This document shows positions 19,930-32,828 of a stretch of 64,000 bases of DNA, piece by piece. The position numbers and the translations under genes were made by a program. Position 1 is the stretch's first letter. Every line of letters starts with the position of its first letter. A model generated the notes under the pieces. It ran no database searches, was not told where the DNA came from, and saw only the letters and a list, made by a program, of their open reading frames with translations. Source of the DNA: Macrostomum lignano (lineage: Eukaryota); the NCBI GenBank assembly GCA_002269645.1, contig NIVC01000864.1, forward strand, positions 62,001 to 126,000, written 5' to 3'.

Positions 19930-22900
19930 ATGGACCTAGATGCAGAATCAGGGAGCATTAGCTCGGCCAGCGATTTGTACCAGAATGCGATATCCGATGA
20001 AAATGGGATTTCTGGTTAGTTTGCCCATATAAATTCTATTTTAGATCTACTGTTTGCATGATGGAAAATTGACAAATGAAGCTTTCATTATCTCATTTTA
20101 TAGATGTCGATAGCATCCTGAAGTCGATCCTTCCTCCGGAACTACTAAAAAAGAATGAAAAATCAAAATCAGCCAGCAAAGGCGCCAGTTCTAGTAAGAA
20201 AGATGATGAAGTGTCCCTGAGCAGCCTGGGCAGCGACTTCAACACTGCTAAATTCAAGTCTAGCCATAGCGGCAGCAAAAAGAAGAAATCTCCAAATGCT
20301 AGTCCTAACGATCTGGCTAAAGATGGCAGCGGTTCTCCACCAGCAAGCGACCGTCGGAACGCCAAGGCTAAGCATAGCAGCAGGTCGAGAAAAGATTCCA
20401 ACGATAGTCTCGACGCTATCATGGCCGGTCTAAGTAAACAGATGGACGAGCTGCCACACCAGAGCGATCGTCGGAGCGCTAAAGTCGGGAAAACATCGAA
20501 GTTGTCTAACAGCAAAGGTAGGAAATCAAAGGACGACGGACTTGAAAATGCAAAGGCCGGTCTAACGGAAGATGGCGACGCTTCACCACTGAGCAGCGAT
20601 CGTCGGAGCACCAAAGCTACCGGATCATCCAAACCAACAAGCAAGAGGTCGAGGAAGGATTCCGACAATAGTCTTGACGCTATCATGGCCGGTCTGGATA
20701 AGGATGCTAGTGAGCTGCCTCACCAGGGCGATCGTCGGAGCACCAAAGCTGCTAAATCGTCCAAATCAACAAGCAAGAGGTCCAGGAATGATTCCGACAA
20801 TAGTCTTGACGCTATCATGGCCGGTCTAAACAAAGATGATAGTGTGCTACCTCACCAGAGCGATCGTCAGAGCACCAAAGCCGGGCGAACATCTAACAGC
20901 AAAGGAAGGAAAGGTCAGGATGATGAACTTAATGATGAAGTGGCAGATCTCTTGAAAGATGGCAGTAGTGCTCAGCCAGTGAGCAGTGATCGCCGCAGCT
21001 CCAAGTCAACAAGCAAAAGGTCTAGGAAACATTCCGACGATAGTCTCGACGCTATCATGGCCGGCCTGAGCGACGATAGCGGTGAAGTGCCGCCGCCTCT
21101 GGCCAGTGATCGTAGAAGCGCCAAAGCTGGCGGATCTTCAAATCCAACTGGCCGGGAATCGGTCAAGCAGTCGAAGGATGCGATGGAGCCACCCCAAGCC
21201 GTTGAGAAGGCCAAGCGGTCTCATAAACCGTCGCAACCGCACGTTCCACAGCAGAGTAACCAGGCGAGGGGTCAGTCAGAGCAGCTGCTGCTGCCGAACC
21301 GGGACTCAAACAGCGTCCACTCCGGCCGGCCTCATATGGCGGACACTCGCTCCTGCGCTTCGGTCCGCTTTGCGCCCGACACTAACCAGGGCGATAATGG
21401 CAGCAATGACGATCGTGACTTCAGTCTGTCGCCACGGCCAGATTCTGCCGCGTTTGATCGGCCAGATCGAGCTCGAGGTTTTCAGCAGCAGCAGCAGCGG
21501 GACAGGCAGAGGCAGCAGCGACAGTCTCAGCCGCAGTCGATGCAGCAGTCGCAACATGGGCAACAAATGATGCTGCAACAGCAGCAGCAGGTGCCAGCCC
21601 AGTTTGCATTCGAGGTGCCCAGCATGGATTCAGGGAGCTCTCAAAATACGTAAGTTATTTAATTCGAATGATCCGTACACCTATACTTTGATGGATGCCG
21701 GCAGCCCTCTGTCACACCATCAATAAGAATGTCGCACCATCAACCATAATATCACACAATCAACTAGAATGTCGCACAATCAACCATAATGTCACACAAT
21801 CAACCATAATGTCACACAATCAACCATAATATCACAAAATCAACCATAATGTCACACCATTAACTATAATGTCACACAATCAACCATAATATCACACAAT
21901 CAACTAGAATGTCACACAATCGACCATAATATCACACAATCAACCATAATGTCACACCATCAACTATAATGTCACACAATCAACCATAATATCACACAAT
22001 CAACCATAATGTCACACCATCAACTATAATGTCACACAATCAACCATAATATCACACAATCAGCCATAATGTCACACAATCAACCATGTCACACAATCAA
22101 CCATAATATCAGAGTCAACCATAATGTCACACCATCAACTATAATGTCACACAATCGACCATAATATCACACAATCAACCATAATGTCACACAATCAACC
22201 ATAATATCACACAATCAACCATAATGTCACATCATTAACTATAATGTCACACAATCAACCATAATATCACACAATCAACCATAATGTCACACCATCAACT
22301 ATAATGTCACACAATCAACCATAATATCACACAATCAACCATAATGTCACACCATCAACTATAATGTCACACAATCAACCATAATATCACACAATCAGCC
22401 ATAATGTCACACAATCAACCATGTCACACAATCAACCATAATATCAGAGTCAACCATAATGTCACACCATCAACTATAATGTCACACAATCGACCATAAT
22501 ATCACACAATCAACCATAATATCTCACAATCAACTATAATGTCACACAATCAACCATGTCACACAATCAACCATAATGTCACACCATTAACTATAATGTC
22601 ACACAATCAACCATAATATCTCACAATCAACCATAATGTCACACCATTAACTATAATGTCACACAATCAACCATAATATCTCACAATCAACTATAATGTC
22701 ACACAATCAACCATGTCACACAATCAACCATAATATCACACAGTCAACCATAATGTCACACCATCAACTATAATGTCACACAATCGACCATAATATCAAA
22801 AAATTAACTAGAATGTCACAATACCTTTATTTACCTATTGTTAATTTATTACCACATGCAGGATGAGCGACGAGCACATTGCTAAGCTGAAGGACTGGGG

Positions 22901-31900: not shown

Positions 31901-32828
31901 AACCGACAGTGGCCGTTTCGGCCGCCACGACGCCCGCCAGCGCCTCGGCCCGCACGCCGAAGCCGTCGGTGACGCCGGGACGGGCCGTCTCCACGCCGGA
32001 GCGCAAGCTCAACGTCAAGTCGCCAAGGAGCATCCTGCGCCGGCAGGACCCGCCGTCGGCTAAGCGACGCAAAGTACATTTTAACGAGCGCGACAATGCC
32101 ATCGAGTTGCGCAGCGGCGAGGCCAAGTCACCGGCCTCTTCGTCGAGTCGTACGACGAGGCGACTCGTGTTGAGCCCTACTTTGGTAAGGCCTGTTCTGT
32201 GTTGCTTGATTCTCGATTCTCAGTGCGTCTGTATCCAGTGCTTGCAGTGTCTATCCAGTGCTTGCAGTGTCTCTATCCAGTGCTTGCAGTATCTCTATCC
32301 AGTGCTTGCAGTGTCTCTATCCAGTGCTTGCAGTGTCTGTATCCAGTGCTTGCAGTGTCTCTATCCAGTGCTTGCAGTGTCTCTATCCAGTGCTTGCAGT
32401 GTCTCTATCCAGTGCTTGCAGTGTCTCTATCCAGTGCTTGCAGTGTCTCTATCCAGTGCTTGCAGTGTCTCTATCCAGTGCTTGCAGTGTCTCTATCCAG
32501 TGCTTGCAGTGTCTGTATCCAGTGCTTGCAGTGTCTCTATCCAGTGCTTGCAGTGTCTCTATCCAGTGCTTGCAGTGTCTCTATCCAGTGCTTGCAGTGT
32601 CTCTATCCAGTGCTTGCAGTGTCTCTATCCAGTGCTTGCAGTGTCTCTATCCAGTGCTTGCAGTGTCTCTATCCAGTGCTTGCAGTGTCTCTATCCAGTG
32701 CATGTCCCATATCGCAGGCCCATCCGACAGCCGCCGCTGAGCCTGCCGAAGTCCAGTGCAACGACGAGGACAGCGGCGACGGATTCTGGCTGGACTCTGA
32801 TCTGATCTTCGGCCAGAAAAAGGCTTAA
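19930..32828 (+). CDS. SYCP1: Synaptonemal complex protein 1-like transverse-filament coiled-coil protein, 16 exons, ~1325 aa
   Basis: Exons 19930-20014, 20104-21649, 22862-22952, 23047-23112, 23393-23534, 23618-23746, 23924-23997, 24083-24191, 24281-24560, 24637-24704, 24954-25153, 29755-29858, 30028-30165, 31200-31608, 31759-32184, 32718-32828. All introns are GT-AG, phases are consistent, total 3978 nt open. A ~600-aa coiled coil is bounded by [13 protein letters not shown] (cf. human NATRHLCNLLKET) and [21 protein letters not shown] (cf. ALMEKHKHQYDKIIEERDSEL). The basic S/T-P-rich tail has AKRRKVHF (cf. KKKRKMAF). Human motifs are from memory. Confidence 0.75.
21712..22820. repeat. 20-bp minisatellite CAATCAACCATAATGTCACA, SYCP1 intron 2
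   Basis: Read directly from the sequence. Confidence 0.95.
23157..23345 (-). mobile_element. tRNA-derived SINE, copy 1, in SYCP1 intron 4
   Basis: Minus strand reads GGTAGCTCAGATG (A box) ... GGCTCGATTCCAAGTGCAG (B box), then a body shared with 60498-60651. Confidence 0.75.
26549..28986 (+). mobile_element. Penelope-like retroelement (RT, Cys linker, GIY-YIG endonuclease; Neptune/Nematis-type), 5'-truncated, ORF 26554-28743
   Basis: 729-aa stop-free ORF with [52 protein letters not shown] and RYIDDIF; linker CGNLSCRPC; [10 protein letters not shown]...[15 protein letters not shown]. It begins at the GKNFVPAP remnant of the LxKGLNFxPxP motif. The 3' non-coding tail carries a hammerhead. Confidence 0.95.
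28883..28926 (+). ncRNA. Minimal type I hammerhead ribozyme in the PLE 3' region
   Basis: Stem I AUACC (28884-88) pairs with GG-U-UAU (28920-25). Core CUGACGA (28889-95) plus an extra A. Stem II GACC/GGUC (28897-900 / 28908-11). GAAA (28912-15). Palindromic AAUU replaces stem III. Predicted cleavage 3' of C28919. Confidence 0.8.
30260..31115. repeat. 33-bp minisatellite GGCGGCATTCATCAAAGGATAGGGCTGAGGGCT, SYCP1 intron 13
   Basis: About 25 tandem units. Confidence 0.95.
32222..32700. repeat. 22-bp minisatellite ATCCAGTGCTTGCAGTGTCTCT, SYCP1 intron 15
   Basis: About 21 near-perfect units. Confidence 0.96.

What the first reader, a model, noticed from the sequence alone, without database searches (positions are those of the whole stretch)
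19930..32828. Likely SYCP1 orthologue hidden across 16 small exons
Seen: a phase-consistent 1325-aa ORF, mostly invisible in the ORF track, with unstructured N-terminus, ~600-aa coiled coil, and basic SP/TP-rich C-terminus. Known: SYCP1 diverges quickly and is recognised in invertebrates mainly by short motifs at the two ends of the coiled coil. Both ends match here (HHLCVSLKD versus RHLCNLLKE; [15 protein letters not shown] versus ALME..DKIIEERDSEL), as does KRRKVHF. Inference: this is the meiotic transverse-filament gene and would probably be annotated only as a generic coiled-coil protein. Its coiled coil appears somewhat shorter than the mammalian one, which predicts a narrower synaptonemal complex.
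Basis: partly seen in the sequence, partly recalled or inferred. Interest (0 to 1): 0.7.

Follow-up and report, generated by a model that had tools for sequence, protein, structure and literature searches.

The report
Flatworm synaptonemal complex gene SYCP1
This is the flatworm (Macrostomum) version of SYCP1, the protein that zips paired chromosomes together in meiosis; it is a known kind of gene, but public databases hold it only as mislabelled fragments.

Summary
Sixteen + strand exons (19930-32828), all GT-AG and phase-consistent, give exactly 1325 aa. The protein has a disordered N-terminus (1-544), a proline-free heptad rod (545-1147) and a basic SP/TP tail.

- An HMM of invertebrate SYCP1 CM1 scores 31 bits at the start of the rod; 900 shuffles reach at most 11.2.
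- hhalign against 28 SYCP1s gives probability 99.1% and score 155; tropomyosin and the reversed sequence score about 44.
- The tail has the spiralian 'RSILR..KRRKVxF' motif, and the protein ends in 'WLDSDLIFG', matching the terminal 'WFDLDSVFGF' of invertebrate SYCP1s.
- Eight intron positions and phases are identical to the Ridgeia and Haliotis SYCP1 genes. Two more match after a 21-nt insertion.

Points against: Pfam SCP-1 does not hit, and single-sequence searches find only two Macrostomum lignano fragments, named 'FHA domain-containing' and 'Myosin_tail_1 domain-containing'.

Two parts of the finding are not supported. The rod (493 aa between anchor residues) lies inside the family range of 479-595, so a narrower complex is not predicted. 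Whether exons 1-2 (aa 1-544) belong to the transcript is unproven. This is a new member of a known family, of moderate interest.

The parts
19930..20014 (+). Exon 1 (aa 1-29). Putative start codon at 19930. Whether it belongs to the SYCP1 transcript is unproven.
   Evidence: ATG followed by a GT donor at 20015; phase 1 joins exon 2 in frame.
20104..21649 (+). Exon 2 (aa 29-544). Disordered S/K/R/D-rich region with five '...[19 protein letters not shown]' repeats, then a Q-rich end. It is either an N-terminal extension of SYCP1 or a separate upstream gene.
   Evidence: Stop-free stretch of 526 codons; in-frame 132-bp tandem repeats. A consensus GTAAGT donor at 21650 overlaps an in-frame TAA. 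No Pfam family and no SYCP1 N-terminal motif.
22862..22952 (+). Exon 3 (aa 544-574). First exon homologous to SYCP1; CM1 begins here. An in-frame ATG (M545) lies at 22863.
   Evidence: Strong acceptor at 22860-22861. The donor after K574 (phase 0) is at the same position as the Ridgeia K78, Haliotis K92 and Saccoglossus K129 introns.
22881..23527 (+). CM1 motif of SYCP1 (aa 551-641, spread over exons 3-5), including '[14 protein letters not shown]'.
   Evidence: Invertebrate CM1 HMM scores 31.0 bits here, ungapped; every other place in the rod scores below 0, and 900 shuffles reach at most 11.2. The best BLASTP HSP to ape SYCP1 (P0004) is in the same region.
23047..23112 (+). Exon 4 (aa 575-596), 66 nt.
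   Evidence: Same length and phases (0/0) as the 66-nt exon of Ridgeia, Haliotis and Saccoglossus SYCP1.
23393..23534 (+). Exon 5 (aa 597-644), 142 nt.
   Evidence: Equals the sum of two spiralian exons (68+74 nt). The 3' intron is in phase 1, at the same codon as Ridgeia C148 and Haliotis C162.
23618..23746 (+). Exon 6 (aa 644-687), 129 nt.
   Evidence: Equals spiralian 59+70 nt. The 3' intron (phase 1) is at offset 271, as in all four orthologues.
23924..23997 (+). Exon 7 (aa 687-711), 74 nt.
   Evidence: Same 74-nt exon (offsets 271 to 345) in Ridgeia, Haliotis, Saccoglossus and Diadema.
24083..24191 (+). Exon 8 (aa 712-748), 109 nt.
   Evidence: Same 109-nt exon (offsets 345 to 454) in all four orthologues.
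24281..24560 (+). Exon 9 (aa 748-841), 280 nt.
   Evidence: Equals spiralian 95+185 nt (offsets 454 to 734).
24637..24704 (+). Exon 10 (aa 841-864), 68 nt.
   Evidence: Same 68-nt exon (offsets 734 to 802) in Ridgeia and Haliotis. The junction to exon 11 is also used in the UniProt fragment P0001.
24954..25153 (+). Exon 11 (aa 864-930), 200 nt.
   Evidence: Equals spiralian 62+117 nt plus 21 nt, i.e. one extra heptad. The junction to exon 12 is also in P0001.
29755..29858 (+). Exon 12 (aa 931-965), 104 nt. It follows a 4.6-kb intron that carries (TCTA)n arrays and a retroelement.
   Evidence: Same 104-nt exon as in Ridgeia (981 to 1085).
30028..30165 (+). Exon 13 (aa 965-1011).
   Evidence: GT-AG, phase-consistent, heptad rod continues.
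31200..31608 (+). Exon 14 (aa 1011-1147). End of the rod, with the CM2-like motif '[27 protein letters not shown]' at 31510-31590.
   Evidence: The CM2 HMM's best hit in the whole protein is here: 8.5 bits, reached by 0-1 of 300 shuffles per shuffle type. The exon 14/15 junction is also in the UniProt fragment P0279.
31759..32184 (+). Exon 15 (aa 1148-1289). Basic SP/TP-rich tail with '[19 protein letters not shown]' at 32026-32082.
   Evidence: Invertebrate tail HMM scores 23.1 bits; shuffles reach at most 8.7. Among the fetched SYCP1 sequences, the motif RSIL[RK]-x(4-10)-K[RK]R[RK]V.F occurs only in the spiralians Haliotis, Mytilus, Elysia and Ridgeia.
32718..32828 (+). Exon 16 (aa 1290-1325 plus stop). 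Contains the terminal 'WLDSDLIFG' motif at 32787-32813; TAA at 32826-32828.
   Evidence: W[FLV][DE]x[DN]x[VIL][FY][GT] lies within the last ~22 residues of all seven full-length invertebrate SYCP1s examined and of hagfish SYCP1, and at aa 1313-1321 of 1325 here. It is encoded by the last exon in Haliotis too.

Best explanation
The locus encodes the Macrostomum (flatworm) orthologue of SYCP1, the transverse-filament protein of the synaptonemal complex.

Shown here: homology to SYCP1 in sequence motifs, domain order, rod length and exon-intron structure.

Inferred from what is known of mammalian SYCP1 (my own knowledge of Dunce et al. 2018; PMC10588951 for head-to-head assembly): two chains form a parallel coiled-coil rod of about 600 residues. 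The CM1 ends of rods from opposite chromosome axes meet head-to-head in the midline. The CM2 end and the basic SP/TP tail sit back-to-back on the axis and bind DNA. 'KRRKVHF' probably serves as a nuclear-localisation or docking motif, and the terminal 'WLDSDLIFG' as an axis-side docking motif.

The SYCP1-homologous protein starts at exon 3 (M545, window 22863). The upstream 544-aa disordered region (exons 1-2) is probably, but not provably, spliced on as an N-terminal extension.
For: 1. CM1: an HMM of 10 SYCP1s (9 invertebrate, 1 hagfish) scores 31.0 bits (per-sequence E 1e-11), ungapped, over aa 551-641 at the very start of the rod. All other rod positions score below 0. None of 900 composition-, heptad- or window-preserving shuffles exceeds 11.2.
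2. hhalign of 28 SYCP1s against aa 545-1325 gives probability 99.1%, E 1.2e-18 and score 154.6, with the alignment starting at CM1. Controls: tropomyosin 44.4, reversed sequence 43.5, heptad shuffles at most 25, block shuffles at most 31.
3. Tail: 23.1 bits (shuffles at most 8.7). '[21 protein letters not shown]' aligns to 'TPQRSILRNTNSVSKRRKVAF' of Haliotis.
4. The terminal W-motif lies at aa 1313-1321 of 1325, as in every full-length invertebrate SYCP1 and the hagfish sequence in the set.
5. Introns: relative to the intron after 'ELQ' of CM1, the model's introns lie at -66, 0, 142, 271, 345, 454, 734 and 802 nt. Ridgeia and Haliotis SYCP1 have introns at all eight of these offsets with the same phases. 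The next two (1002, 1106) equal the Ridgeia introns at 981 and 1085 plus 21 nt. My exon boundaries were fixed, before any orthologue was seen. By my own calculation, seven further coincidences on 10 sites within 868 nt have a chance of about 3e-14.
6. The ungapped alignment fixed by the intron anchor alone (312 aa) scores BLOSUM62 +161 with Haliotis and +106 with Ridgeia. It is the best of 49 heptad-preserving registers in all four species.
7. Architecture and rod length are within the family range.
Against: Pfam SCP-1 (PF05483) gives no hit even at E<=10, either for the whole protein or for segments. Eight of nine invertebrate SYCP1s pass it.

Single-sequence searches are not significant. BLASTP against ape SYCP1 (P0004) gives E=0.46. 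phmmer against PDB finds no SYCP1 chain. Searches of 5.8 billion proteins return only two Macrostomum fragments. The top 150 hits of P0004 in the representative library include no flatworm protein, so a classical reciprocal best hit was not obtained.

CM2 is weak (8.5 bits). Sequence identity in the rod is only 13-17%. No expression or localisation data could be examined. The N-terminal 544 aa has no SYCP1 counterpart.
Confidence: 0.9

Rival explanations
1. There are two genes. An upstream gene for a disordered repeat protein (exons 1-2) ends at the TAA at 21651-21653. A separate 781-aa SYCP1 gene starts at ATG 22863, with the acceptor at 22861 used for spliced-leader trans-splicing or for a 5'-UTR exon.
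For: An in-frame TAA sits inside the putative donor GTAAGT. The first full codon of exon 3 is ATG. Other SYCP1s have only about 40-130 aa before CM1. No SYCP1 N-terminal motif occurs anywhere upstream. aa 1-544 match no family. From my own knowledge, trans-splicing is common in Macrostomum.
Against: The donor is a perfect consensus GTAAGT exactly at the end of a 526-codon stop-free stretch, and its phase (2) fits exon 3. By my estimate this is roughly a 0.5% coincidence if the two were unrelated. All four orthologues have coding exons upstream of the exon that holds the start of CM1. The Q-rich end of exon 2 resembles the Q-rich stretch before CM1 in Branchiostoma, Saccoglossus and Elysia. No AATAAA follows the TAA.
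Confidence: 0.35
2. It is a generic long coiled-coil protein (golgin, myosin-tail-like, centrosomal, CCDC39-like), and the SYCP1 resemblances come from coiled-coil composition.
For: Pfam gives only weak generic coiled-coil hits (crescentin rod, AAA_13, ATG16, Filament), all below their thresholds. UniProt names one fragment 'Myosin_tail_1 domain-containing'. hhalign gives an unrelated coiled coil 67% probability, so coiled coils do inflate these scores.
Against: The CM1 hit is position-specific and far above the shuffles. The tail and terminal motifs lie outside the coiled coil. Ten shared intron positions cannot come from composition. There is no hit to CCDC39 (PF24161) or to any golgin or myosin family at curated thresholds.
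Confidence: 0.03
3. It is a real SYCP1 homologue, but this copy is a redundant or decaying duplicate and another copy does the meiotic work.
For: The UniProt fragments P0001 and P0279 differ from this copy at about 5% of residues (10 of about 195 by my count), so at least one more copy or haplotype exists. From my own knowledge, M. lignano has a recent genome duplication. Four introns carry mini- or microsatellite arrays, and one of them also holds an intact retroelement.
Against: The reading frame is intact through all 16 exons, all splice sites are canonical, and the conserved motifs are preserved. The insertions are intronic.
Confidence: 0.15

Closest known systems
SYCP1 of other spiralians: Haliotis cracherodii XP_071115241.1, Mytilus galloprovincialis VDH92807.1, Elysia marginata GFS00535.1, Ridgeia piscesae KAK2187874.1
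   Same: CM1 aligns ungapped. The tail shares 'RSIL[RK]..K[RK]R[RK]V.F'. The terminal W-x-D-x-D-x-x-[FY]-G motif is shared (absent from the Ridgeia model, whose last exon looks mis-annotated). Eight introns are identical to Ridgeia and Haliotis, plus two that are shifted by 21 nt. The exon-length series 66/142/129/74/109/280/68 nt is the same. Rod length is similar: 493 aa here against 497-595 in this group.
   Different: Only 13-17% identity over the rod. The conserved Trp of CM1 ('KIRKWK') is displaced by one heptad. Pfam SCP-1 is not reached. The model lacks the introns at offsets 68, 201 and 549. It lacks the N-terminal 'PFFKPL' motif and may instead carry a 544-aa disordered N-terminus.
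Mammalian SYCP1 (human/ape, 976 aa; Pfam PF05483)
   Same: Three-part layout. CM1 ('RHLCNLLKE' against 'HHLCVSLKD'), CM2 ('ALMEKHKHQYD..ERDSEL' against '[21 protein letters not shown]') and the basic patch 'KKRKMAFEF' against 'KRRKVHFNE'. The intron after 'ELQ' is inferred from read-through fragments.
   Different: Jawed-vertebrate SYCP1s in the set lack the terminal W-motif and end in '...EDRWAVIAKMD...' instead. Pairwise similarity is not significant (E=0.46).
Schmidtea mediterranea SYCP1 (Xiang et al. 2014, as cited in PMC10151401)
   Same: A flatworm SYCP1 that was likewise recognised mainly through CM1.
   Different: I could not compare it: its sequence did not come up in any search I was able to run.
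Non-homologous transverse filaments: Drosophila C(3)G, C. elegans SYP-1, yeast Zip1
   Same: Same expected role and the same overall layout of a long coiled coil with disordered ends.
   Different: As PMC5803294 states for the Drosophila and C. elegans proteins, these are lineage-specific proteins without CM1. The window gene is a true sequence and gene-structure homologue of SYCP1, not an analogue.

Membership tests
SYCP1 (synaptonemal complex protein 1) | Match to Pfam SCP-1 (PF05483) above the gathering score of 23 bits | tested here: not met
   No PF05483 hit at E<=10 for the full protein, the rod or the motif segments. As a control, 8 of 9 invertebrate SYCP1s score 35-117 bits, but P0257, which has a clear CM1, also fails. 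The test is therefore sufficient but not necessary.
SYCP1 (synaptonemal complex protein 1) | CM1 motif (about 83 aa) at the N-terminal end of the coiled coil; PMC5803294 describes it as the feature that best separates SYCP1 from other coiled-coil proteins | tested here: met
   31.0 bits against the invertebrate CM1 HMM and 20.1 bits against the all-taxon HMM, at aa 551-641. Shuffles reach at most 11.2 and other rod positions score below 0. hhalign starts there, probability 99.1%.
SYCP1 (synaptonemal complex protein 1) | CM2-type motif at the C-terminal end of the coiled coil ('M..LEK.K.E..K....KD.EL') | tested here: inconclusive
   The best CM2 HMM hit in the protein is at the expected place (aa 1114-1156), but it scores only 8.5 bits. 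In each shuffle set, 0-1 of 300 decoys reach it.
SYCP1 (synaptonemal complex protein 1) | Layout of a disordered head, a coiled coil of about 500-700 aa and a basic DNA-binding-type tail, with rod length in the family range | tested here: met
   Proline-free aa 535-1151. Heptad index 0.52 against 0.275 +/- 0.017 for shuffles. K/R- and SP/TP-rich tail. CM1-Cys to CM2-'LEK' is 493 aa against 479-595 in 13 SYCP1s.
SYCP1 (synaptonemal complex protein 1) | Tail motifs of invertebrate SYCP1: 'RSIL[RK]..K[RK]R[RK]V.F' and the C-terminal 'W[FLV][DE]x[DN]x[VIL][FY][GT]' | tested here: met
   Both are present, in order, at aa 1237-1255 and 1313-1321 of 1325.
SYCP1 (synaptonemal complex protein 1) | Shared exon-intron structure with bona fide SYCP1 genes | tested here: met
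   Eight intron offsets and phases are identical to Ridgeia (L001) and Haliotis (L002). Five of these are also in Saccoglossus (L003) and four in Diadema (L004). Two more match after a 21-nt shift.
SYCP1 (synaptonemal complex protein 1) | Reciprocal best hit with a known SYCP1 | tested here: inconclusive
   Forward searches return only Macrostomum fragments. In the reverse direction, ape SYCP1 (P0004) against the representative library gave 266 hits, of which only the best 150 are visible, and none is a flatworm protein. No golgin, myosin or centrosomal protein is a significant hit either.
SYCP1 (synaptonemal complex protein 1) | Meiosis-specific expression and localisation between the lateral elements | not testable with these tools
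   No transcript or imaging data were available. No paper in the library links Macrostomum with SYCP1 beyond a passing mention.

The most novel reading that the evidence does not exclude
The flatworm transverse filament really does carry the 544-aa disordered head encoded by exons 1-2, with its five '[19 protein letters not shown]' repeats and Q-rich end. That is several times longer than the head of any SYCP1 seen here. It would place a large low-complexity domain in the midline of the synaptonemal complex and imply a central element built differently from the mammalian one. A related point is that the terminal W-x-D-x-D-x-x-F-G motif, shared by the invertebrate SYCP1s examined (spiralians, echinoderm, hemichordate, amphioxus) and hagfish but absent from the jawed-vertebrate sequences in the set, could be an axis-docking motif that has not been described. 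A Nematostella preprint reports an unexpected interaction between the SYCP1 C-terminus and HORMAD1.
Probability: 0.4. Interest if true: 0.5.

Novelty: new member of a known kind. Interest (0 to 1): 0.35.

Why it matters
Synaptonemal complex proteins diverge so fast that orthologues are often missed, and Pfam and BLAST both fail here. This locus gives Macrostomum lignano, a flatworm model amenable to transgenesis and RNAi, a usable SYCP1 gene model in place of two mislabelled fragments. That makes synapsis directly testable in a hermaphrodite with a recently duplicated genome.

It also shows that intron positions can settle the orthology of rapidly evolving coiled-coil proteins when sequence statistics are marginal.

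Finally, it highlights two conserved tail motifs outside the coiled coil (RSILR..KRRKVxF and the terminal WFDxDxVFGF) whose binding partners are unknown.

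Tried and rejected
- Pfam on the whole protein and on five segments: no SCP-1 hit, only sub-threshold generic coiled-coil families.
- phmmer against PDB with the 781-aa protein and with the CM1 and CM2 segments: no SYCP1 chain; keratin, p85 and reovirus sigma-1 appear as noise.
- Word-indexed homologue search with aa 545-1325, and again with a motif-only query: only the M. 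lignano fragments P0001 and P0279.
The representative search started from P0004 was what supplied the invertebrate sequences.
- Genomic look-ups of P0001, P0279 and the Mytilus protein: not on record. I therefore could not compare the second Macrostomum copy.
- Search for an SYCP1 N-terminal motif ('PFFKPL' or an N-terminal HMM) in all + strand frames of 14000-22900: nothing above 5 bits.
- My first exact spliced mapper failed on Ridgeia. I replaced it with seed chaining.
- I considered and rejected the 33-bp minisatellite (30245-31114), which is open in two + frames, as a coding exon. It would break the rod, and the exon 13 to 14 join keeps frame and heptads without it.
- I considered CCDC39, the outgroup used in PMC5803294. 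There is no PF24161 hit on this protein.

Full report
**1. What is there**

Reading the three + frames between 19500 and 33500 and the raw sequence, I placed splice sites by hand. The result is 16 exons from ATG 19930 to TAA 32826-32828. Every intron is GT-AG and every phase is compatible. Exon GC is 0.56 and intron GC is 0.39.

Four introns are filled with repeats:
- a 20-bp minisatellite in intron 2;
- (TCTA)n arrays either side of a retroelement ORF in intron 11;
- a 33-bp minisatellite in intron 13;
- a 22-bp minisatellite in intron 15.

The protein has three parts. The first 544 aa are S/K/R/D-rich with five '[19 protein letters not shown]' repeats and a Q-rich end. From aa 535 to 1151 there is no proline. 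A simple heptad index is 0.52 for aa 545-1147, against 0.275 +/- 0.017 for shuffles of the rod, 0.10 for the head and 0.04 for the tail. The tail holds 10 of the 15 SP/TP sites and is basic.

**2. Whose genome it is**

The only database relatives of aa 545-1325 are two UniProt entries from Macrostomum lignano. P0001 (553 aa) is named 'FHA domain-containing protein'. P0279 (224 aa) is named 'Myosin_tail_1 domain-containing protein'. Both are truncated or mis-spliced models of a copy that is about 95% identical in the shared exons. They use several of the same junctions as my model (10/11 and 11/12 in P0001; 14/15 in P0279). The window therefore comes from M. lignano, as another copy or haplotype, or from a very close relative.

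**3.

- Pfam SCP-1 (PF05483) gives no hit at E<=10, either for the whole protein or for segments. Only generic coiled-coil families appear, all below their thresholds.
- phmmer against PDB finds no SYCP1 chain.
- BLASTP against ape SYCP1 (P0004) gives E=0.46. Its best HSP does pair the start of this rod (aa 6-128 of the 781-aa form) with residues 106-228 of P0004, which is CM1.
- No golgin, myosin or centrosomal protein is a significant hit either.

**4. Profile evidence**

A full HMMER search of 1.84 billion representatives with ape SYCP1 (P0004) gave 266 hits. Among the listed 150, source names identified SYCP1s from Haliotis, Mytilus, Elysia, Ridgeia, Saccoglossus, Diadema, Branchiostoma and hagfish. 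Pfam confirms most of these.

| Test | Score for this protein | Controls |
|---|---|---|
| CM1 HMM (9 invertebrate + 1 hagfish SYCP1s), aa 551-641, ungapped | 31.0 bits, per-sequence E 1e-11 | other rod positions below 0; 900 shuffles (full, heptad-preserving, 40-aa windows) at most 11.2 |
| Tail HMM | 23.1 bits | shuffles at most 8.7 |
| CM2 HMM, best hit at the expected end of the rod | 8.5 bits | reached by 0-1 of 300 shuffles per set |
| hhalign, 28 SYCP1s against aa 545-1325, starting at CM1 | probability 99.1%, E 1.2e-18, score 154.6 | tropomyosin 44.4; reversed 43.5; heptad shuffles at most 25; 28-aa block shuffles at most 31 |

Coiled coils inflate hhalign scores, which is why I ran the controls. 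The drop on block shuffling shows that collinearity matters.

**5. Motifs outside the coiled coil**

- 'KRRKVHF' is part of a longer spiralian motif. '[21 protein letters not shown]' here corresponds to 'TPQRSILRNTNSVSKRRKVAF' in Haliotis, 'RSILKNTERNSAVKKRRVAF' in Mytilus, 'RSILRMVNSERKRRKVAF' in Elysia and 'KSILKQTGSVPKRRRVVF' in Ridgeia.
- Every full-length invertebrate SYCP1 in the set, and hagfish SYCP1, ends in W[FLV][DE]x[DN]x[VIL][FY][GT], for example 'WFDLDSVFGFGPED'. This protein ends in '[15 protein letters not shown]', with the motif at aa 1313-1321 of 1325. None of the jawed-vertebrate sequences has it.

**6. Gene structure, the decisive evidence**

I fetched the genomic loci of Ridgeia, Haliotis, Saccoglossus and Diadema SYCP1 and mapped their exons exactly. 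Intron positions below are in CDS nucleotides, measured from the intron after 'ELQ' of CM1.

| Gene | Intron offsets (nt) |
|---|---|
| Ridgeia | -176, -66, 0, 68, 142, 201, 271, 345, 454, 549, 734, 802, 864, 981, 1085 ... |
| Haliotis | the same series from -66 to 981 |
| Saccoglossus | -66, 0, 68, 201, 271, 345, 454 ... |
| Diadema | 0, 68, 201, 271, 345, 454 ... |
| This gene | -157, -66, 0, 142, 271, 345, 454, 734, 802, 1002, 1106, 1244, 1653, 2079 |

Eight introns coincide in position and phase with the spiralian genes. The introns at 1002 and 1106 equal those at 981 and 1085 plus 21 nt, which is one heptad. Exons 4-10 here (66, 142, 129, 74, 109, 280, 68 nt) equal single spiralian exons or sums of two adjacent ones. 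I had fixed my exon boundaries, before seeing any orthologue.

By my own calculation, seven coincidences beyond the anchor, on 10 sites within 868 nt, have a chance of about 3e-14. The ungapped protein alignment defined only by this anchor scores BLOSUM62 +161 with Haliotis and +106 with Ridgeia. It is the best of 49 heptad-preserving registers for all four species, whose controls average about -100.

This settles homology with SYCP1 and also validates exons 3-12 of the model.

**7. What remains open**

*(a) The N-terminus.* In favour of a single gene:
- a perfect GTAAGT donor lies exactly at the end of a 526-codon open stretch, in a phase that fits exon 3;
- all four orthologues have coding exons upstream of the exon that holds the start of CM1;
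- the end of exon 2 is Q-rich, like the stretch before CM1 in several invertebrate SYCP1s.

In favour of two genes:
- an in-frame TAA lies inside that donor;
- exon 3 begins G|ATG;
- other SYCP1s have only about 40-130 aa before CM1;
- nothing upstream resembles an SYCP1 N-terminus.

I put the single-gene reading at about 0.6.

*(b) Rod length.* The distance from the CM1 cysteine to the CM2 'LEK' is 493 aa. It is 532 in the ape sequence P0004, and the range over 13 SYCP1s is 479-595, including Ridgeia 497, hagfish 494 and Diadema 479. The prediction of a narrower complex does not follow.

*(c) Function* is inferred from homology only.

**8. Mechanism**

This part is inferred from mammalian SYCP1, from PMC10588951 and my own knowledge of the structural work. 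Parallel coiled-coil dimers span half the complex. CM1 ends interact head-to-head in the midline. The CM2 end and the basic tail assemble back-to-back on the axis and bind DNA. 'KRRKVHF' looks like both a nuclear-localisation signal and an RVxF-type phosphatase-docking motif; that reading is a lead from memory and was not tested. A Nematostella preprint reports binding of the SYCP1 C-terminus to HORMAD1. This makes the conserved terminal W-motif a candidate docking site, which is speculation.

**9. Verdict**

This is a correctly spotted SYCP1 orthologue that is mislabelled in public databases. It is a new member of a known family. Interest is moderate: it provides a usable gene model for a flatworm model organism, a clean example of intron positions rescuing the orthology of a fast-evolving coiled-coil protein, and two tail motifs worth following up.

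Noticed in passing
window 26554-28743 (+), inside intron 11; flanked by (TCTA)n arrays at 25183-26548 and 28987-29715: An intact 729-aa ORF has a reverse-transcriptase domain (RVT_1, E 1.4e-9) and a weak C-terminal GIY-YIG match (20.6 bits, just under the 22.6 cut-off). This is the layout of a Penelope-like retroelement. It lies in the same orientation as the host gene and sits in the middle of a tetranucleotide microsatellite.
   Followed up: partly
P0221, P0222, P0228, P0230, P0236, P0240, P0255, P0269 (C-termini); window 32787-32813: Invertebrate and hagfish SYCP1s share a motif at the extreme C-terminus, W[FLV][DE]x[DN]x[VIL][FY][GT]F. It is absent from all jawed-vertebrate SYCP1s in the set. 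I found no mention of it in the papers I read, and its partner is unknown.
   Followed up: partly
window 32062-32082 (KRRKVHF) and the equivalent 'K[RK]R[RK]V.F' in spiralian SYCP1s: The conserved basic motif fits both a nuclear-localisation signal and the RVxF consensus for docking protein phosphatase 1. This is a resemblance recalled from memory and was not tested.
   Followed up: no
window 21710-22820, 30245-31114, 32227-32701, 33663-34065: Large minisatellites lie in and just after the gene: 20 bp x 56, 33 bp x 26, 22 bp x 22 and 33 bp x 12. The 33-bp array in intron 13 is open in two + frames and two - frames, which produces long spurious ORFs in the ORF list.
   Followed up: partly
window 20541-20902 (exon 2): In-frame 132-bp (44-codon) tandem repeats encode the '[26 protein letters not shown]' units, which occur five times in aa 100-350. 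No homologue or family was found for this region.
   Followed up: partly
window 36335-38698 (+) and 13432-14205 (+): There are other mobile-element remnants near the gene. One is a 787-aa ORF with aspartyl-protease and integrase (rve) domains, typical of an LTR-retrotransposon pol. The other is a 257-aa ORF with DUF1759.
   Followed up: no
L001 (Ridgeia piscesae SYCP1 locus), about 19920-20280 and 22204-22224: The deposited Ridgeia gene model looks wrong at its 3' end. One junction could not be resolved with GT-AG (the protein reads '...PNVAFLHLAMFQKSILK'). The annotated last exon ('IKLMMIL') also lacks the terminal W-motif that the other invertebrate SYCP1s have.
   Followed up: no
UniProt A0A1I8FC96 (P0001) and the M. 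lignano entry P0279: The public protein models of the second Macrostomum copy are chimeric or truncated. P0001 starts in exon 10, skips CM2 and runs into an unrelated downstream sequence, which is presumably where its 'FHA domain' name comes from.
   Followed up: partly
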